NCBI GenBank assembly: GCA_964057225.1
Contig: OZ059899.1
Span: 6,262,001-6,326,000, forward strand
Length of the DNA: 64,000 nt
Reading direction: 5' to 3'
Source of the DNA: Auanema rhodensis
Lineage: Eukaryota > Animalia > Nematoda
In this document: positions 6,257 through 24,039 of the stretch, one piece after another
Numbering within the stretch: position 1 is the stretch's first letter
How the letters are laid out: each line of letters opens with the position of its first letter
Notes under the pieces: model-generated
The model's input: only the letters and a program-made list of their open reading frames with translations
The model's database searches: none
What the model was told of the DNA's origin: nothing
Position numbers and translations under genes: made by a program

Positions 6257-8012
6257 TGTTTATAAGTTAATATTTTAAATTCAAAAATAATCGTAAATAT
6301 AAGATGATAATTCTCTGAAAATCAATACAATTTGTCTGGAACATTAACGAAAGGAATGATTTAGTTCCATGATTTTTAAAAGTATTGGAAGCGACTAAGA
6401 AAGAACAATGATATTGGTTTTTTCAATGATAAAATGATAATTGTGATAACAGGTATAGTTAGATAGCTTAGTTCGTTTATCATAGTTGATAAGAACATTT
6501 GAAAGTTTTTAAGATATGTGATGTGCCATTTACAAGGATTGGCTGTTCAAAAAAGAAATGCTGATATGATCCTGTTGAAGAAATGCTTTATCATACATGT
6601 TCTATATAACAATTAGAATAATCCTAGGGTTTTCAAGTGCTATTGTCAGAAACATTGGTAGAACAATGAATTAATGTTTCTAACTGCTTTCAAGGTTCTA
6701 GCACTAGGAATGAATAGGTTGTTGGGCTAACTCAGAAGTGACTGTAGAAGTTGATGAACGAACTTCCGATAGAGAGCGCATAAAGTTGATCAGCGTTGCT
6801 TGAAACTGGAAAATGAAATTTCTAAAGATAATTGAATCGGGTCTTGAAACGAAATCTATAACCCATTTGAATGAAGTTGAATATTATTGATCAGTATAAG
6901 ATGTTTAAGAGAATTATAACAAAAATTATAATTTTCTATTTAGTTCACAATAACATCGATAATGATGGTAACGACGACGATAGGAATTTCATCCAACCGT
7001 GATAGGTTAGGCAGGAATTTTGGGCTGAATTTGCCATATACAAAGATTCTCAAAAGCAATTTTGATTTTGAAAAAAAAAGTTATTCAACCATGTAGAGGA
7101 CAAAATGACAGAATGATGTGCTGTTGATTGACTATATGCCCTAGATAGTTTTAGCTGGAGTATAAATTCAAACATCATCCAAGTTTAAATTGTATGATCT
7201 ACCGTATCTGAGGTGATCTTTCTCTATCGAACTGAATTGTATCGCTTAAACTCTATTTAAATATTTAATGACTGATTTGACTCTATATTATATGTTTTAT
7301 ACGTTAATACTAGTTATGTAGAAAGACAAGCAAGACATTTGAAGTGCAGAATCATCAAATGACACATGAGGAAAAACTAGAAGTTTCATTATCGTGGGCT
7401 ACTATGTATGGCCACAACGACAATCACGTTCACAAGCTCTGGCAATCTGTCCATCTATTTGACAGACGAATTGTATACAAAGTACGATGTTGATGAAGAT
7501 GATGGCGATGTCCTTAGTACTGAACTAGGAGGAGATTGTAAGAGAGATGATTGAACTGTACTTTAGCTATACGATAGACATAGATGTCACTCATCTATTT
7601 ATTCTTTCAAACTACCATAATTTTGCTGAGATTTCAAGGTAATCAGCCATAAAGACCTACAAAGAAATTAAATAAGGTTAAGCTGAAAGATAACTAATAA
7701 TAATATAATATATTACCTTATTATATGATATTCATATATACGCATATAGTCAAGTTTTTATAAAATTAACTTGTCATCAATTCGAATTGATTTTACAACA
7801 TATGTATGTAGTTGTTATCCAGTTATATATAATACGTTTGAGGAAATTTGAATTTTTTAGAACAGGCATATGATCTAATGAGAAAATGTGAGATTCGACC
7901 TCCAAATCTACCTGGAAATAAACAACAATCACGTCATATACCTCTAACTAACAATTATTGTTGGAACATATTCAACAACATGATTTGGACCTTTCTATAA
8001 TCAATCCTAATT

Positions 8013-8013
8013 T

Positions 8014-8050
<37 letters not shown>

Positions 8051-8064
8051 TTCTCTCTCTCTCT
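8013..8064. repeat. (CT)n microsatellite, imperfect
   Basis: Directly visible. Confidence 0.9.
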
Positions 8065-8955
8065 GTCTTTTCCACTCTTTTTCTCTTTTTCTTTCTTTTA
8101 TTCTATCATCTATCTACTCCTTTTCCCTTGCATTCTTTTCCATTATCTATAACCTAGTCCCATTTCACTTTCTCTCTCCATATCTCTTTCCCTCTTTTTC
8201 TTTCTTTTTCCGATGTTCTTTCTGATTATACAAAAAGGATAAATTTTCTACCATAAGGGACTGACTAATACTAAATATAACTAGAAAACATTGAATAAGA
8301 GCAAGAGAGAAAGACGGTGAAAAAGAACTTTTGTTGCATGATTTTCTTGTTATTCAGTTTATTTCATAAGCTATTTCAATTTTCTATTTTCTTTTTTCAT
8401 TGAATGTACATGAAATATTTTTTTTTTTGAAACGTCTTCTAATTACGAAGGATTTAGCTGTTACATTGACTTTCTTACAAAGAAATAGAGCAACAAGCTA
8501 TCGAAATATCGTTACTAAAATCGTCAGGTGTGTCCTTGTCAAATCGGATCAGAAGAAAGTGAGTAGGAATCAGTTGCCAATCTATTGACCGATGTCTGAA
8601 CATGAAAAGTTGTTTTTTTAGAAACAAAAATTGTGTAAAAAAAAGGAGATCATCTTAAAAAACTTTGAGGTTCAAGAAAAAGCTTTTGAAAAATAAATTT
8701 TGATCTAAGTTTATGAGTTAAATCATTAATAGTTATAGAACATATTGTTTTTCTGGTCTTGCGCTTATCATCATTAAAACTGTGTGTATTAGATCTAATT
8801 AAAACGGATCCAATTAGAAAATTATATTAGAGAAGTACGAAGGTGAACAAATGAATAAAGAAAAATACGAGCATTTGTATGATAGAGAGTGTTAGAGATA
8901 GAAAGAGGTGAACGAATTAGAAGAGAAGAAGAGGCATCCAAATGAATAGATAGAA

Positions 8956-8960
<5 letters not shown>

Positions 8961-9029
<69 letters not shown>
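8961..9029. repeat. (GA)n microsatellite
   Basis: Directly visible. Confidence 0.95.
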
Positions 9030-9030
<1 letters not shown>

Positions 9031-12000
9031 ATGAGATAATGAAGTGATTGGGTAGCAGTTTACGAGCTCATAAAGGCAAATCCATGGCTATTAGAGATCG
9101 GTAAAGAGTAAGATAGACTATTACAGAGTTATAATCCATATATATATATGGATTACTGTTGAATATGTTTGAAAGATATATGTCTAGCTAAACATATTTA
9201 GATTTTAGCTCATTTCGTTTACATTACCTGACACATTCATACATATGGACATCGAGAAATAGATTGAGAACGAGCTTCCACAATTCTCAACAAACAGCCT
9301 GATTTTGTGAAATTTGAGAAAACGAAAACAGAAAACTGAATTGAAAACCGGAGAGAGAATTTTAAGCTAAAAAATACTGTTGGCAACACAAAGCCGACAT
9401 AGCCGGTGGTCTGGATCCGATTCTATTTCCAAATCGCATAGAGTAAGTAGTCAGTCACTAAGAGCCAAAGCCCATTTCTTGAATCTCGTCGTTTTTTTTT
9501 TGTGAAAATAAGGCAAGCCAGCATCGCAGGAAGTTCATAAAATTCAAAAATTTCGTAAATTGTAAAACGGATTTCAAAGTACACTTTTTTTGCAATCCAA
9601 TACTTTCATTTTTGTGAACTAACAGGGAGGGGTTGTGGAATATTCGTTATAAAGTTCAATTGAATAGCACATGAAAGTTACATATTTTTCTTTTATACTA
9701 AAAAAATTTTTATTGAAGAAAATGAAAATAATATATTTTAATTTAATAAGTAACATCCTACAGTTTATACTATATGAACATAGCGAAAATAGTATAGTTA
9801 AAACAATTTTTTTCCCACGAACTGTCATGAAATTATTGAAAAAATTTCAAAATAAAGTTTCTAGAAATTTTGACTAAGTTCTTGAGAATTGAAGAAAAAG
9901 AGCACAGAATGTTCAGAAAAACCATTGAAAAAAGAATGAAGGGGAGATTATTCTAATAGAAAATAGAAATAGCCTTGAGGTTTTGAATCGAGAAATGGAA
10001 TAAAAAGAGGGAATAGAAAAGAAATCGAGAATAAAGAACACGTTTTCAAATTGGGGAAACCCCCCCCCCCCTTCCTTCTCTTTATTTTCTGTCTCTCACT
10101 CTCTTTAAACGTTAAAAGTTTCCCTCTATTTCGTTGCCTTTCTCTACCATCGTTGTTAATCACTTGCTTCGCTTCTTCCATTAAATTGAAGTAGAAATAG
10201 TAGAAAATGATATGTGGAAAGATTAGAAACAGAGTAGTATTTGAATTTTCAATAGTTTTATTCATAATATTCAATAAGAGTATTGTTTAGTTCTTTTATA
10301 TAAATTATTTCAAGGATTTATTGAAAAATCGTAAATTTTCTTTTTCTTTCTCATCAAATGCAATACAATCTTACAATGAAGCAAATAAAGTATTTAAATA
10401 ACTTAAATTGGGAAAAGTGGTCATTTCATCTTTTGCTTCTAATTCTTTTTATATCTATTTATATATATATAAATAGATAGATAGATCTGTATATATATAT
10501 ATATGTTTAATCATTATTATTTTTGAATGATTTTATGTATAAATCAAATAGTTGTTCTACGTAAGGGATTAGCTAATAACTGATGTATAACGGCTTTCCC
10601 AATGTATACCAATATTCATTTTTCTCTCAGATTTCTTTACTCTTTCACGAGCATTGGGAAAAATTTAGCTGATCAAACATCGACTTTCATTCTCATCGAG
10701 CAGATATTAACTTTATTTGGGCCAACCTAATTAGCATAATCGTTTAAGTATCAAAATTTATTTTGAATCATCTCTTTGTGTTACACCGATTTAAATTATA
10801 AATTATACAAGAACACCTGAAAATTGATTGTACTAAACAGAATGACCAATGTGTGTTGTATCTTTATATTTTATAAAAGAAGAAGGGGGGTATATTATTT
10901 TTGTTTTCAATATTATATAAATACCAATTTAAAAGATTTAGGTGAAATATGATTTTTAACCTTAAACCATCGTACCACTATAACTGGACAGCCTTAGAAT
11001 ATAAGAGAAAATGCGTAGAGAAGTTTATAAAGAGAAGGAGGGACAGGAGCGAAGACGACATATTGAATTGAATAATAGAAAGAAGTGGAACCTATGATTG
11101 GTATAAAGGCAAAACTTGTTGAAGTTTAAGTTGTTTCATAAGTATGTTGCTGTGATAAATCTAGAGAAAAGGAGCAAAGTTAAAGACGTAATACTAATGC
11201 TTGCTGAGACTCAAAACGGTTTAACAAACAAAATCTTTCAGAAATAAAGATTGAAATGAGAGAGCATATTGATGGCATCGATGAAGATTAAAAGAAATGG
11301 TTATGAAAACATTTTAGATCATATTCAAACATATTTAATATATCTGTAATTAGATGGAAAAATGAATAAAAAGAGCTGGGAAACCTTCAAAAGGAGGATA
11401 GAATAAACTTAAGTAAATTCTATAGCATTTGTGATGATAATTTTATTATTTACTTTACTAATTGAGTTATACTTATCAAGAATTATGTGAAAATAGAAGT
11501 AATTGTTTTGAAAACAGTGTAAAATTACCATAACATAAAAATAGCTTCCCTTTAAATTGCTTTTTGAAATAAAATAATTATATTATATCATATACTTAAT
11601 TTACATTTGTTCAATGATTTTGAATACAACTTATCTAAATGTTCAAAACAATTAGAAATGAATGTTATTGATAATAATAAGAAAATAATTCAAATTGATG
11701 CCGAAACTAATGAATACAACCGCTTATGAGTTACAAATAAATAAAATTAATAATTATCAAAGTATAGGCGTGAAACAAACGTGAAGTTCTATTGTTTTGT
11801 AAAAATTCTATATATATACATACGTATGTATATATAAAAATGATACTTAAATATAAAATAATTCTCGGTTATCATTTTCTAAATTTACCACATTTTTACT
11901 TAAAATCCTCAGAAGTGCAAATCAAAAATAAGGAATTTGGAAAGAAATTATGACAGTGCATAAGCTCTAAAAGATTAAGAAAATCTATTATTAATTTAAT

Positions 12001-18518: not shown

Positions 18519-21500
18519 TCATAATGGATCATAATCTTGGTCATCCTGTAAAATTGGTCCTCCAAGAAACTCCTCAAGCGTAATTTGTGGGTTTTTAGAA
18601 GTACTTCCTGCTTTAGCCGATGATTTCTTTTTTAATTTTGTCATGCCATCCTTGCTTTTAGTCTTTCTCTCTGTTCCACTTTCAATAGTTTTCTTTTTTT
18701 TCTTCTTCGGTTTTTCTTCACCCAGAAGATTCTGTAATAAAAAAGGGATTCCATTCATAATCATATTAGCCTACTGGAATGATCATGGGAACAGGTTGAG
18801 GGGCATTAACAATTGGCTTAGAATCTGAAGTTATTGGTAACTTGACTCCGATTTCTTCATCAGATGATTCGACAGTTACTTGAAAATTAATCTATAACAA
18901 CATGAGATACATTTCAACAGAAATTGTGTATGATACCTTTGAACAAGCTGTGCTCTCCTCTTTTCCAAGCCATTCATCTAAATCTTCAGTTGTAAAAGCA
19001 GAACAACTCTCTGTTGGTTCTGTGATGCTATTAACAACAGGCAACTATAATAAGTGATTATTTATGGAATAGAAAACGGTGTAAACAAAGGCAAATTTGG
19101 ATTCTTCTCATTTCGAAGATATAAGAAAGATACAGGGCCAAAATAATAATATACAACTTTGAACAGAATATATAAACGGCTTTCTTTGTATAATTATTGT
19201 TTTAATAACTTTGATTAATTCCAATAATTACTCAGAATTTTTATTATATTTTATTTTATTTTACCTCTTCTGTTATAGGACTGCTCTGAGTAGTATACGT
19301 AATAGGACAGTCTGAATCGGTTCTATCAGGTGTTATGTACTCCTCATTAGATGAATCAGCATTATCACTTTCAAGGTTAACATGGTATGCTAAAAAACAT
19401 GGTAGAGATGTATGATAGAAAACAAACAAACCTGGTGGTGTTACAGATGGTGGAGGAGGTTCATGAAATTTCAAAACAGTACTTTTTTTTACTTTTTTCT
19501 GTTCCACAGCCATTTTAGACATTTTTTCATTAAGATCATCATCCGCATAAAAATCTTCCTCGAAAGTTCGTACCATTGTATTACCGAAATTTTCACTGAA
19601 AAATTCAAATAGAAAATTGAATAAATTATATAACCTACTCATCACTAGCACTAGGACGATGAATGGGTAATGTAGCAGGCCGTTTAGCTTTTTCTAAATT
19701 TTCAGAACTATCTAAGAACTGATTAATACTGTCATCCTCATCCTCATCATCATCAACTCCGAGCATTTCAAATGAATCTTTTCGTGCCTCCTTATTTACA
19801 GGTGACCGTTCTGAAGAGAGGACGACTTTAAAGTATTAAAGCTAATACATTTTCTCACTCGTGATAGTTGAATCAGCTGTTTCAGCTACAGAAGCATCGG
19901 ACGGTTTGCGACTTGTTCTAAAATGCACAATCAGTATACAAACTAAACAGTAAAAATACTTTTCAGGCGACAGATTTTGACCAGGTATTGGCTGTCCCCC
20001 ACCCATTACTCTTCCCGAAGGAGTTACCGAAGAAGCCTTCACTCCTTGGCTTTCGGCCACTTGACGACGTCGTTGAGTTACAGCATCCATAAACTTATCA
20101 TAATCAGCTTCAGGAGTCTCTTGATAGCAATCTAATTCAGTATAACTAGAGATAATTTCAGTCTTATTTCGCTCCAATTGTAATTTTAAAGTATTTCGCT
20201 AAAAAAGAACTATAAAATAATATATTTGTACTTAAACAAACTTGTAAACATAAGAAAGGAATGTTGAAGAATAAATGTACAAGGCGTAATCCAAAAGCAT
20301 TTCTCATCGATGATGCAGTCCACCGTACTCTTGGAGATCCATCGGGCATAGAATTTGATCTAAATATATAAAAACCATTATTTTAAAGTTCAAACAAAAT
20401 ATTATCGTTTATGGCTATTTATATTTGTAAAACTGCTTAAACTATTTGCGATTACTTACATATTTATTGAAAAAAATGTAAAACATATACTCAAATTTGC
20501 TTGACAAAACCCGATTAGTTCATATAATAAAGCATTCTACAAATGAATCGTTACAAATTACGATTCTGGTGGAGGCGGTACTGCAATAACAGAATAATCC
20601 AAAGATTCGCTTTGTCTTTCAATATCAGCGAATTCTGATCTATTTAATCCGCAACAACTACTTATGTCTACATTGCCACCATGAATAAGGTGAAGTTTTG
20701 TTACAATATATACATCACCCCTACAATATGGACACCTTGCATTAGAAAACCCAGTCTCCTGGAATGTGGGATAAATATGTACAAACTGGTATATAAGAAC
20801 ACACCTTCCATATCCGAAATAGGCAACAACAACAAACTAAATGTCCACATTCCAACTTTCGATTACTCCAGTTGGTATCGCATATATTACACATTTCCAC
20901 TGTTAAAGATACTTCAGCAGAAGAAGGTTCATCCCCTTCTTTAGTTATTCCATTTAAATCATTGATAGGCTCGGGTTTGCGCTTTGGAAGCCCTACAGGT
21001 TCAAAGAACAGGCGGCCCAGAGCAACAATGAATATGACAAGTGAAATTGTTTGGTCAACCTACAATTTATCATAGGGGAAAAGCAAAAATGTAACAGAAA
21101 TTACTTTAAGCAAAATCAAGAGAGGGATACCTTTGCCTGCATATTCAGGCAAATAGAACTGAGTTATAACCATAATTGTCACAATTGATTGGAGCAAAGT
21201 CATACATGACAAAGCTAGTGATAAGCTCAAAAGAACACGGTGAGCTCTTCGAGAGGATCTAACAACCCATCCTTTTCCTCTAATTTTACCGGTTCTTACG
21301 TCTATCTGCAAGAAACATCCAAATCCTTGCAAAATTGAAAATATACCAAACCTGTACTCTACCTGCTGATACAAGGTAATGATATAAACAGGCTGACCAA
21401 AATGTAAGAACAAATATTATGGCAGAAAGATGAATAGCTAGTGTACGATCAGTTTCCGCCCAATCAGTTACGGCTATTCCTTTAAGAGTTTGAATTACTC

Positions 21501-22964
21501 GCAAAGTTCAAAGAGCTATGCTCTTGGTCTAATGACGAACCTGGCCAATGAGCAAAAGCAATACCGTACAAACACAGGGCCGAGCCATGTCTTAGAAGAA
21601 AAGACCAAGGTACAGCTGTCAAATTGAATTGATCGTAAGTAAAATAAGGTAGACAGAAACCGCTCATCTAGAAGTTGAATCTCCACATTGAATAGTTAAC
21701 TTTCGGAATCAACACTAAGATCGATAACAGTGCCACCCTATCTTATCTCTGGGAAGAGGTTAACGAAGATAGTGAGAAGAGGAAGAAAACAGTCAGGCAA
21801 TATTGTTATAGTACCAGGCGCAAACAGAAACACTAACATATATAAAGTTCGAACCCGAAAATAGTATTGATTATTTATTCACTTTTGCTCGAATGGAAAA
21901 GTGAGATAGTGAGAAAATGGTTAGTGAGAATAGGCGGAGAAAACTAGAAAAGAGATTGAAACAACAGGTTTCAGTACTTTCCTTTGAAAACAAGCTATTG
22001 AATTGGTGAGTCTCTTTGATGAAAAGAATCTTTTTTTCAAATAACCTCGTAATATTTGTAATTTAATTTCTTTAACTTTCAAGATTTTCTCTATATTTGG
22101 TAAGTGCTAGTTTCGAAACTGATCAGCTATCATGCATGAATAAGTCAAAGTCATAAAAAACTAACTTATTGAATGAATCCACAAAACTATCGCACATCTC
22201 ATCTGTAACCACACGATGGTGACCCATATCTCTTCTGTTAGCAAGGATAATAACCTTAACAGGTGGAGTTATAGTTATAGTTCTCAATTATATATACTGG
22301 GATGGTATCCGGTATATGGTTAATTTCCTTCTGAACATATTCCCAAGTCCATTGCTTCGTTAAATCGAACATTAGAACTATTCCATGAGCACCCTTATAG
22401 ACATCAACAAATCGGGCATCACATATGGCATCTTCGAGTGACTAAAAAAATTAATTTTTTTTTAAATACATTATCAATTAATTACATCCTCAGCAGGAGA
22501 CGAAGAATTATTCTGTGAATTGTTACTAAGCTTGAGCTTATCATTTTTTATCCGTTTTTTGGTACTTTGATCAACTATATCCCATACATCAACTTTAACA
22601 ACATCATCAGTTGCTTTGTAATTCCAGTGTATATTTACAACCTGGATAATTTCAAAATGAAAAGTGAGTTCTACCGTAAAATATACCTGAATCTCTTCTG
22701 TGGGCACGTACTCCTCACAAAATGATAAGCCTTGCAGCCGCTTTAAAAGACATGTTTTGCCTACATTTCGATCGCCGCGTATAACTATTTTCACTAAAGA
22801 AAATTTGAATATTCTTTAATACATAAACACGTACTATTATACTGAACCCCACGAGCATATTTCTTTTGTAATTCATTATCAACTCGTGAAACTCCTGGAG
22901 GCATTACTGGATGAGCAGTGGAATCCTTATCTCCCCCCAACTTTCGTCGAAGCGCAGAAATCAT
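18519..22964 (-). CDS. RABL6: Rab-like protein 6 (RBEL1/PARF), multi-exon; one intron of about 1.8 kb (20360-22165) hosts a nested gene
   Basis: [28 protein letters not shown] (G1), [64 protein letters not shown], and a Lys-rich tail ending LEEFLGG...DYDPL*. TTCAG lies directly before the ATG. Confidence 0.93.
20558..21667 (-). CDS. Multi-pass transmembrane protein with a C-terminal C3HC4 RING finger (putative membrane E3 ligase), nested in the RABL6 intron
   Basis: Five exons joined by four short GT..AG introns give an open protein of about 300 aa. About 4 hydrophobic segments precede [42 protein letters not shown]. ttctag precedes the ATG, the stop is at 20558, and a minus-strand AATAAA is at 20463-20468. 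Confidence 0.85.
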
Positions 22965-23104
22965 CTGAATACATAAATTCTGAATAATTTTTAAATTTAT
23001 TGAAAGTAGTAAGGGTGATAAACCCATTAAAGTAAAAAACGTAAACGTGAAGAAATCATGGATATTATTGAGCATTAGTAACAACAAATAACAACATAAT
23101 GCAA

Positions 23105-24039
<935 letters not shown>

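What the first reader, a model, noticed from the sequence alone, without database searches (positions are those of the whole stretch)
20360..22165. Complete same-strand TM-RING E3 ligase gene nested in a RABL6 intron that splits the GTPase domain
Seen: typical introns here are 40-60 nt, but this one is 1806 nt and holds a 5-exon gene in the same orientation. The nested gene has its own acceptor-ATG, and its AATAAA sits only about 100 nt before the next RABL6 exon. Producing RABL6 mRNA requires skipping five exons and a polyA site, so one transcript can probably yield only one of the two products. Established: most nested genes are antisense to their host. Inference: the nested mRNA could be released by SL trans-splicing from the intron of a polycistronic homt-1/RABL6 transcript (an intronic cistron), or come from an internal promoter.
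Basis: partly seen in the sequence, partly recalled or inferred. Interest (0 to 1): 0.75.

Follow-up and report, generated by a model that had tools for sequence, protein, structure and literature searches.

The report
Membrane RING gene nested in RABL6
A complete gene for a four-pass membrane RING-finger protein sits on the same strand inside one intron of this nematode's RABL6 GTPase gene; the layout is shared by distantly related nematodes and looks like an ordinary self-contained nested gene rather than a new way of making mRNA.

Summary
Window 22165-20360 (minus strand) is one 1806-nt, phase-2 intron of a RABL6 orthologue. Its neighbouring introns are 41-61 nt. It splits the G domain between G4 and G5.

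Inside it, on the same strand, lies an intact five-exon gene (ATG 21667, stop 20560-20558, AATAAA 20468-20463). The gene encodes about 303 residues: four transmembrane helices and a C-terminal C3HC4 RING. Two exon borders differ from the simplest reading.

The same layout occurs in Auanema, Diploscapter, Pristionchus, filariae, two other Logan contigs and one metagenome contig. Caenorhabditis briggsae lacks both the intron and the gene. In one rhabditid contig (L018) the gene sits in the same intron but inverted.

RNA contigs from other nematodes show the RING mRNA alone and polyadenylated, and RABL6 mRNA with exons 5 and 6 joined.

A short GATA-containing block upstream of the nested ATG is conserved, and it travels with the gene in the inverted case. 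I read the gene as an autonomous unit with its own promoter. The "intronic cistron" idea is not supported, but it is not excluded without RNA from this species.

This is a new member of a known kind, of moderate interest. Earlier notes of this scan record two other same-strand nested pairs elsewhere in this genome.

The parts
22835..22964 (-). RABL6 exon 1 (ATG at 22964)
   Evidence: Direct reading. 70% identical to residues 1-43 of Caenorhabditis RABL6.
22687..22793 (-). RABL6 exon 2, carries the G1 P-loop (GDRNVGKT)
   Evidence: Pfam Roc E 9e-8 and Ras E 1.5e-5 on exons 2-3 read through the 45-nt in-frame intron. 91% identical to Caenorhabditis RABL6.
22486..22641 (-). RABL6 exon 3 (G3 region)
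22298..22441 (-). RABL6 exon 4
22166..22254 (-). RABL6 exon 5 (G4, NRRD); ends in phase 2
   Evidence: Aligns to residues 178-206 of Caenorhabditis RABL6.
20360..22165 (-). Host intron 5, 1806 nt, GT..AG, phase 2
   Evidence: Same intron position in seven other loci (L002-L004, L006, L014, L015, L018). L007 lacks exon 5.
21719..21796 (-). Conserved non-coding block 51-128 nt upstream of the nested ATG; GATA core GATAAGATAG at 21747-21738
   Evidence: The only alignable part of the intron against Auanema: 81 nt, 74%, E 6e-9. The core recurs upstream of the inverted copy in L018. By chance the motif is expected 1.4 times per 64 kb.
21541..21667 (-). Nested gene exon N1; ATG 21667 directly after AG 21669-21668; first transmembrane helix
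   Evidence: The start (MSGF here, MSSF or MSF elsewhere) matches orthologues.
21352..21479 (-). Nested exon N2; second transmembrane helix and the conserved HY-VSAGRV motif
21105..21305 (-). Nested exon N3; conserved hairpin and third transmembrane helix
   Evidence: Donor AAA|GTAATT at 21105/21104.
20805..21059 (-). Nested exon N4; fourth transmembrane helix, linker, and RING zinc ligands 1-6
   Evidence: Seven library hits at E up to 0.001. Pfam zf-C3HC4 partial match E 0.04. Single copy in this genome.
20558..20758 (-). Nested exon N5; RING ligands 7-8 (CPYC), tail, stop 20560-20558
20463..20468 (-). AATAAA of the nested gene
   Evidence: The equivalent signal lies about 60-90 nt before host exon 6 in L002, L003 and L007.
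20242..20359 (-). RABL6 exon 6 (G5-like SSMRNAFGL and the FFNIPFL motif)
   Evidence: 69% identical to residues 208-246 of Caenorhabditis RABL6. 73% to the Ascaris protein named GTP-binding protein Parf.
19960..20198 (-). RABL6 exon 7
18519..19917 (-). RABL6 exons 8-14: 19917-19859, 19810-19639, 19595-19432, 19389-19265, 19044-18937, 18891-18775, 18731-18519. Stop 18521-18519. Total 646 codons.
   Evidence: Direct reading. The exon lengths sum to a multiple of three. The C-terminal YDPL matches the Brugia model.
22996..23001 (-). AATAAA of the upstream homt-1-like methyltransferase gene, about 36 nt before the RABL6 acceptor and ATG
   Evidence: The methyltransferase-then-RABL6 order is kept in L002-L006 and L018.

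Best explanation
The interval is a single intron of a RABL6 (Rab-like 6 / Parf) orthologue. It houses an autonomous, same-strand nested gene for a nematode-specific four-pass membrane protein with a C-terminal C3HC4 RING finger, presumably a membrane-anchored E3 ubiquitin ligase.

Shown:
- Both genes are intact and conserved.
- The nesting at this exact intron is shared by rhabditid, diplogastrid and spirurine (filarial and other) nematodes.

Inferred:
- The nested gene is transcribed from its own promoter in the roughly 500 nt of intron upstream of it. The conserved GATA-containing block at 21796-21719 is the candidate.
- Its pre-mRNA has no 5' splice site upstream of the AG that abuts the ATG, so it would receive SL1 there.
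- It ends at its own AATAAA.
- RABL6 mRNA arises when polymerase starting upstream (probably in an operon with the homt-1-like gene) reads through the nested poly(A) signal and exon 5 is joined to exon 6, skipping five exons.
- A host transcript that instead joins exon 5 to the nested first acceptor reads Lys-TGA immediately. It would give only a G-domain stump lacking G5 and is a likely target of nonsense-mediated decay.
- The deep conservation is most simply passive. A gene inside an intron cannot be moved away by rearrangement without breaking its host. It can be inverted in place (L018) or lost together with the intron (Caenorhabditis).
For: Host is one gene:
- Window exons 5 and 6 abut at residues 206 and 208 of Caenorhabditis RABL6 proteins.
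- C. briggsae has no intron there (one tblastn segment over residues 121-319).
- Intronless RNA contig L017 and the Ascaris protein P0015, named GTP-binding protein Parf, join the two halves.
- Pfam Roc and Ras match exons 2-3.

Nested gene is real:
- Orthologues P0002, P0008, P0009 and P0130-P0140. They are colinear with my exon model.
- All eight RING zinc ligands are present.
- Single copy in this genome.

Same layout elsewhere:
- Auanema L002, Diploscapter L003, Litomosoides L004.
- Pristionchus mayeri L006, where the public annotation already has a nested pair.
- L015, L014 and L007.

Autonomy:
- L018 has the gene inverted in the same intron.
- L008 is a 1003-nt intronless contig with AATAAA and a poly(A) tail. 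It holds only the RING ORF and no RABL6 exon.

Promoter:
- The only conserved non-coding block of the intron lies 51-128 nt before the ATG (81 nt, 74%, E 6e-9).
- Its GATAAGAT core also lies upstream of the inverted copy.
- Filariae have their own conserved 199-nt upstream block containing TGATAA.

Trans-splicing:
- The genome has an SL1 gene array and at least four SL2 genes.

From my own knowledge, not checked here: an upstream 5' splice site turns a nematode trans-splice acceptor into a cis acceptor (Conrad et al. 1991, 1993).
Against: - There is no RNA evidence from this species. The promoter, SL1 use and read-through are all inferred.
- L008 shows no spliced leader at its 5' end. Its first 40 nt could come from unspliced precursor, and its species' genome layout is unknown.
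- Five public gene models fuse the RABL6 G domain to the RING protein (P0004, P0010, P0011, P0012, P0014). One of them is named 'Bm3207, isoform b' of Brugia malayi. Cross-splicing between host and nested gene may therefore really occur.
- The GATA motif was picked after seeing the data. It was not found upstream in Diploscapter. In Pristionchus one match lies about 330 nt upstream of the conserved start, on the opposite strand.
Confidence: 0.6

Rival explanations
1. Intronic cistron. The nested mRNA has no promoter of its own. It is cut out of the homt-1/RABL6 primary transcript by SL trans-splicing at 21668/21667 and cleavage after 20468, so each host transcript yields either RABL6 or the RING mRNA.
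For: - Same strand; an AG abuts the ATG.
- The genome has SL1 and SL2 genes.
- homt-1 and RABL6 are packed like an operon.
- Spacing from the nested AATAAA to the next host acceptor is about 100 nt, as between operon genes. It is about 60-90 nt in L002, L003 and L007.
Against: - The acceptor follows a 5' splice site 497 nt upstream, not a poly(A) site. By the known outron rule (my knowledge, not checked here) cis-splicing should win.
- A conserved block sits upstream of the ATG.
- The gene works in inverted orientation in L018, where this route is impossible.
- Spacing is 0.5-1.5 kb in Pristionchus and filariae.
Confidence: 0.12
2. Alternative 3' module. RABL6 exons 1-5 are spliced in frame into the nested gene, for example at the internal AG near 21591 that reads Lys-His-Gly. 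This would give a G-domain-membrane-RING fusion as a real isoform alongside or instead of the separate mRNAs.
For: - Fusion models exist in Auanema, Setaria, Onchocerca, Wuchereria and Brugia (Bm3207 isoform b).
- The internal AG is in frame with exon 5 in the window, Auanema and Diploscapter.
Against: - The AG comes from an AGA arginine codon. It is absent where Arg is CGT (L008, L009).
- Frame compatibility has a one-in-three chance and is inherited with the gene structure.
- The fusion points differ between species' models, as expected of gene predictors.
- The fusion would lack G5.
- It is impossible in the inverted L018.
Confidence: 0.1
3. RABL6 is really two genes here, an N-terminal G-domain stump and a C-terminal protein, with the RING gene simply lying between them. 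Diploscapter and Litomosoides are annotated this way.
For: Public models split it: 224 + 496 residues in Diploscapter and 209 + 419 in Litomosoides.
Against: - The split would cut the G domain between G4 and G5.
- Donor and acceptor phases match in the window, Auanema and Diploscapter.
- The halves are contiguous in Caenorhabditis, in the Ascaris protein P0015 and in RNA contig L017.
- Pristionchus is annotated as one gene spanning the nested one.
Confidence: 0.04
4. The nested open frames are a decayed or chance feature with no function.
For: None beyond the lack of RNA data from this species.
Against: - Intact 303-codon frame with canonical splice sites.
- Of 22 family-invariant positions, all but two (Ala to Gly, Ala to Ser) are kept, including all eight zinc ligands.
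- Orthologues occur across Rhabditida.
Confidence: 0.02

Closest known systems
Same-strand nested (intronic) genes as catalogued in Drosophila and other animals (Lee and Chang 2013, PMC3814207; Solda et al. 2008, PMC2330155)
   Same: One gene lies wholly inside an intron of another on the same strand, with no shared exon and the risk of cross-splicing.
   Different: In flies 71% of nested genes are antisense, and 72.5% of same-strand ones are single-exon. Parallel nested pairs are poorly conserved. Here a five-exon same-strand gene sits in a mid-coding intron and the pair is shared across distant nematode lineages. In filariae the nested gene is intronless, which fits that paper's idea of selection against mis-splicing.
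cha-1/unc-17 cholinergic locus of C. elegans (VAChT gene inside the first intron of the ChAT gene, shared 5' exon); from my own knowledge
   Same: A conserved same-strand nested pair in nematodes. Splice choice decides the product.
   Different: There is no shared non-coding leader here. The upstream host exons are coding, and joining exon 5 to N1 gives an immediate stop. RNA contig L008 carries no host exon. The nested gene sits in intron 5, not intron 1.
Nematode operons resolved by SL2 trans-splicing
   Same: Same-strand genes packed within about 100 nt. The genome has SL2 genes. The upstream homt-1-like/RABL6 pair looks like an operon.
   Different: The nested gene's acceptor is preceded by a splice donor, not by the poly(A) site of an upstream gene. 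The inverted copy in L018 shows independence from host transcription.
Membrane-anchored RING E3 ligases (for example RNF5/RNF185, MUL1, AMFR)
   Same: Transmembrane helices plus a C3HC4 RING with the Ile and Pro that usually contact the E2. The RING resembles TRIM32, CBL, RNF8, IDOL and MUL1 RINGs.
   Different: No homology outside the RING. The four-helix membrane part with its conserved hairpin has no Pfam, PDB or Atlas relative. The family was found only in nematodes.

Membership tests
RABL6 (Rab-like protein 6 / Parf) orthologue | N-terminal Ras/Roc-type G domain with a P-loop | tested here: met
   Pfam Roc E 9e-8 (32.8 bits, cut-off 27) and Ras E 1.5e-5 on exons 2-3. GDRNVGKT read in exon 2.
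RABL6 (Rab-like protein 6 / Parf) orthologue | Colinear with named RABL6 proteins through and beyond the G domain, including the [15 protein letters not shown] segment | tested here: met
   Exons 1-7 are 62-91% identical, in order, to Caenorhabditis proteins named Rab-like protein 6. The C-terminal end matches as well.
RABL6 (Rab-like protein 6 / Parf) orthologue | GTP binding or hydrolysis | not testable with these tools
   Biochemical property.
RING-type (C3HC4) E3 ubiquitin ligase | Eight zinc ligands in C3HC4 order and spacing | tested here: met
   Read across N4 and N5. They match the invariant columns of alignment A3. The exon-wise Pfam hit is only partial (E 0.04) because an intron splits the RING. 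Orthologue P0009 passes the zf-RING_2, zf-C3HC4_3 and zf-C3HC4 cut-offs.
RING-type (C3HC4) E3 ubiquitin ligase | Ubiquitin-ligase activity with an E2 | not testable with these tools
   Only the E2-contact-type residues (Ile after ligand 1, Pro after ligand 7) can be read.
Nested (intronic) gene pair | The inner gene lies wholly within one intron of a single outer gene | tested here: met
   The flanking exons are adjacent in intron-less orthologues.
Nested (intronic) gene pair | Two separate mature mRNAs | tested here: inconclusive
   Seen only in other nematodes: L008 (nested gene alone, polyadenylated) and L017 (host alone). No RNA from this species.
SL2-type operon cistron | The acceptor lies about 100 nt downstream of the poly(A) signal of the preceding gene on one transcript | tested here: not met
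   The nested acceptor lies 497 nt after a 5' splice site, with no poly(A) signal of an upstream gene before it.
SL2-type operon cistron | SL2 on the mature mRNA | not testable with these tools
   Needs RNA reads.
Shared-leader nested locus (cha-1/unc-17 type) | A common 5' exon spliced alternatively to the nested gene or the host body | tested here: not met
   Joining exon 5 to N1 reads Lys-stop. The 5' end of L008 holds no RABL6 sequence.

The most novel reading that the evidence does not exclude
The pair is kept together because the intron acts as a switch. Use of the nested acceptor or poly(A) site on host transcripts would tune RABL6 output. Alternatively it would yield G-domain-membrane-RING chimeras of the kind modelled as Brugia Bm3207 isoform b. 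The two genes would then be functionally coupled rather than merely trapped together.
Probability: 0.12. Interest if true: 0.65.

Novelty: new member of a known kind. Interest (0 to 1): 0.4.

Why it matters
Same-strand nested genes that contain introns are the rare class thought to be selected against because of mis-splicing. This one is shared by nematode lineages as far apart as rhabditids and filariae. Nature has also supplied two informative variants: one lineage with the gene inverted in place, and one (Caenorhabditis) with the intron and the gene both gone. That makes it a convenient natural system for asking how a host gene splices across an active same-strand gene.

It also has practical value. 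Several public nematode annotations split RABL6 in two (Diploscapter, Litomosoides). Others fuse its G domain to the RING protein (Auanema, Setaria, Onchocerca, Wuchereria, one Brugia isoform).

The RING protein belongs to an uncharacterised, apparently nematode-only family with no detected Caenorhabditis member. That may be why it has never been studied.

Tried and rejected
- **Bacterial promoter and terminator scan:** irrelevant to a eukaryote.
- **PDB sequence search with RABL6 exons:** only weak generic Rab/Rho hits.
- **Remote homology of the membrane part:** the profile against PDB, Foldseek on the AlphaFold model of orthologue P0002 (pLDDT 64) and Pfam found the RING only. The ESM Atlas gave scores of 0.82-0.84, which is chance level.
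- **Stems that could bridge the host donor and acceptor across the intron:** only AT-rich pairs of 10-13 nt, at chance level.
- **Non-coding RNA in the intron:** no tRNA. One sub-threshold snoRNA-like match on the plus strand (23 bits against a cut-off of 40, E 0.19).
- **Literature:** nothing on RABL6 in nematodes or on Bm3207. The Chen and Stein paper on C. elegans gene topology was not in the library. I could not find a passage stating the outron rule, so that rule is given as my own knowledge.
- **L016:** colinear with genomic L015, so uninformative about transcripts.
- the joined (spliced) window proteins were not assembled, searched or folded. All searches used single exons by reference or orthologue proteins returned by the tools.
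Full report
**What is in the sequence**

The window is nematode DNA with about 32% G+C. Its genome is 181 Mb in 112 contigs. Earlier notes of this scan place vhl-1 and hbl-1 in the same window. All genes discussed lie on the minus strand.

From direct reading and three-frame translation the host gene has 14 exons from ATG 22964 to stop 18521-18519. The exon lengths sum to 646 codons plus the stop.
- Exon 5 (22254-22166) ends with two bases of a codon.
- The next GT..AG intron runs from 22165 to 20360 and is 1806 nt long.
- Exon 6 (20359-20242) completes the codon.
- Neighbouring introns are 41-45 nt.

**The host is RABL6 and is one gene**

- Exons 2-3 match Pfam Roc (E 9e-8, above the cut-off) and Ras.
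- A search with the G-domain part of a Setaria protein returned 963 proteins at E up to 1e-5. The listed ones are overwhelmingly named Rab-like protein 6 or Parf, from nematodes, arthropods and molluscs.
- Window exons 1-7 are 62-91% identical, in order, to Caenorhabditis RABL6. Exon 5 ends at residue 206 and exon 6 begins at residue 208.
- In C. briggsae the region is uninterrupted: one tblastn segment covers residues 121-319.
- The Ascaris protein P0015, named GTP-binding protein Parf, joins the two halves.
- So does L017, an intronless 2291-nt Logan RNA contig.

**The nested gene**

Five exons on the same strand give a 303-codon frame: N1 21667-21541, N2 21479-21352, N3 21305-21105, N4 21059-20805, N5 20758-20558. 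Two donors had to be placed at 21352/21351 and 21105/21104. The nearer GT sites break the frame.

With these borders the product is colinear with Diploscapter pachys protein P0002 and other orthologues. tblastn of P0002 against the window gives E 1.6e-47. The gene is single-copy in this genome.

Exon N4 alone retrieved seven proteins at E up to 0.001 from 1.8 billion representatives. A family profile then found 18 proteins. Every one with a source name is from a nematode; the others are unnamed Logan contigs. They include filariae, Diploscapter, Pristionchus and several Logan assemblies. None is from Caenorhabditis.

All eight zinc ligands of a C3HC4 RING are present, split by an intron after ligand 6. 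Orthologues pass the Pfam RING thresholds.

An AlphaFold model of orthologue P0002 (mean pLDDT 64) shows four long helices. A short hairpin lies between helices 2 and 3, which is the best-conserved stretch. A disordered linker and the RING follow. Foldseek and a PDB profile search recognise only the RING.

That step is left out by rule.

**Signals**

- An AG (21669-21668) abuts the ATG. The same is true in Diploscapter and in RNA contig L008.
- AATAAA at 20468-20463 lies 104-109 nt before host exon 6.
- The corresponding distance is about 90, 80 and 60 nt in Auanema, Diploscapter and the metagenome contig L007. It is 0.5-1.5 kb in Pristionchus and Litomosoides.
- Joining host exon 5 to the nested first acceptor reads AA|A TGA, that is Lys then stop.

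**The layout elsewhere**

The order [quoted passage not shown], all on one strand, is seen in these loci:

| Locus | Organism or source | Note |
|---|---|---|
| L002 | Auanema melissensis (identified via PMC9984802) | |
| L003 | Diploscapter pachys | |
| L004 | Litomosoides sigmodontis | nested gene is a single 930-nt exon |
| L006 | Pristionchus mayeri | public annotation already shows a nested pair; the inner gene is the divergent orthologue |

Three further contigs are too short to include the methyltransferase gene and show only part of the order.

| Locus | Organism or source | What is seen |
|---|---|---|
| L015 | Logan contig; host about 90% identical to the protein of L017 | RABL6 exons 1-5, then the RING gene |
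| L014 | Logan contig | the RING gene, then RABL6 exon 6 |
| L007 | soil metagenome contig | the RING gene, then RABL6 exon 6 |

Public annotations handle the locus badly.
- RABL6 is split in two in Diploscapter and Litomosoides.
- Its G domain is fused to the RING protein in Auanema (P0004), Setaria (P0010), Onchocerca (P0012), Wuchereria (P0014) and Brugia (P0011, 'Bm3207, isoform b').

C. briggsae has the same neighbours (RING gene, VHL, methyltransferase, RABL6). It has no nested gene, and the three adjacent introns flanking window exons 5 and 6 are absent. That pattern fits intron loss through a cDNA copy, which would delete a nested gene with its intron. This last point is my inference.

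**The inverted copy**

Logan contig L018 is genomic, 16.8 kb, and its RING protein is about 60% identical to that of L008. It carries homt-1 and RABL6 on one strand.
- RABL6 exons 1-5 run from 10060 to 9240, and exon 6 onward from 7365.
- The RING gene (7755-9189) lies in the same intron on the other strand.
- Its poly(A) signals abut host exon 5.
- The 389 nt before its ATG now face host exon 6.

The nested gene can therefore function antisense to its host. That is incompatible with dependence on the host transcript in that lineage.

**Evidence for its own promoter**

- Between the window and Auanema the intron is unalignable except for one block 51-128 nt before the nested ATG. The block is 81 nt, 74% identical, E 6e-9. 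A wider blastn found only coding matches.
- The block holds GATAAGATAG (21747-21738) and a further TTATC.
- The core GATAAGATRR is also present upstream of the nested ATG in Auanema and in the inverted L018. By chance it is expected 1.4 times per 64 kb on both strands.
- Filariae share a separate 199-nt upstream block with TGATAA.

WGATAR sites are the binding sites of GATA factors, and in C. elegans TGATAA marks intestinal promoters. This is my own knowledge, and the tissue is a guess.

**Trans-splicing**

The genome has a tandem SL1 gene array with more than 50 copies, and at least four SL2 genes above the Rfam cut-off. From established work (Conrad et al. 1991, 1993; my knowledge), a 3' splice site is trans-spliced only when no 5' splice site lies upstream on the same RNA.
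- On host transcripts the nested acceptor should therefore be cis-spliced to exon 5, giving the dead-end Lys-stop product.
- On transcripts started inside the intron it would take SL1.

**Transcripts**

L008 (SRR6179856) is a 1003-nt intronless contig with AATAAA and a poly(A) tail. It encodes only the RING protein. It has 40 nt upstream of the ATG that are not RABL6 sequence and not a spliced leader. L017 shows the host spliced across the junction. Neither is from this species, and the genome layout of the L008 species is unknown.

**Verdict**

This is a real same-strand nested gene in a G-domain-splitting intron, but the evidence favours an autonomous unit with its own promoter (confidence about 0.6) over an intronic cistron (about 0.12). 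Chimeric isoforms (about 0.1) remain possible as minor products.

The literature agrees that this class is unusual. In Drosophila 71% of nested genes are antisense and same-strand ones are mostly single-exon, attributed to selection against mis-splicing (PMC3814207). Same-strand overlaps are under-represented and poorly conserved in animals (PMC2330155).

The deep conservation here is most simply explained by entrapment within an essential-looking host gene. Notes from this scan list two other same-strand nested pairs in this genome. I did not test them.

Noticed in passing
window 22964-23107 (minus strand): The homt-1-like methyltransferase gene stops at 23107-23105. Its AATAAA (23001-22996) lies only about 36 nt before the acceptor and ATG of RABL6 (22964). 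The two genes are adjacent on one strand in every nematode locus examined, and Plectus has a fused gene model (P0020). This looks like a conserved operon with very tight, SL1-type-like spacing.
   Followed up: partly
window 19045-19264 (minus strand): RABL6 intron 11 is 220 nt, the second-longest in the gene. It opens with GTAAAATAAAATAAAA, so an unspliced transcript meets a stop after two codons and an AATAAA at once. This could give a short 503-residue isoform by intronic polyadenylation. The full gene runs on to 18519.
   Followed up: partly
L018:7234-10060: In this Logan genomic contig the RING gene lies in the same RABL6 intron but on the opposite strand. Its poly(A) signals (about 9225-9237) abut host exon 5 (donor about 9243), so the two mRNAs probably overlap tail to exon.
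   Followed up: partly
L005:6001-9980 (C. briggsae): Caenorhabditis RABL6 lacks three adjacent introns around the nesting site and has no nested gene. No Caenorhabditis member of the RING family was found. This is consistent with cDNA-mediated intron loss deleting the nested gene.
   Followed up: partly
L004:10001-10930, L009:520-1461, L015:2519-3517: In filarial and other clade III contigs the nested gene is a single exon. Rhabditid copies have 4-6 introns. Same-strand nested genes without introns are the class favoured in Drosophila.
   Followed up: partly
G000:C3:6741531-7099372; G000:C5:8569074-8569180 and three other sites: A large tandem array of SL1 RNA genes (more than 50 scored copies, many spaced at multiples of 252 nt), and four SL2 RNA genes above the Rfam cut-off.
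   Followed up: no
L002:21517-21607: Auanema has a second sequence 76% identical to window RABL6 exon 1, about 12 kb downstream of the real exon 1. It could be a duplicated exon or a paralogue fragment.
   Followed up: no
L002, L003, L004 and proteins P0004, P0010-P0014, P0020: Public gene models at this locus are wrong in several nematodes. RABL6 is split into two genes, or its G domain is fused to the RING protein or to the methyltransferase.
   Followed up: partly
window 21985-22059 (plus strand): A sub-threshold C/D snoRNA-like match (RF00324, 23 bits against a cut-off of 40, E 0.19) in the upstream part of the host intron. Probably chance.
   Followed up: no
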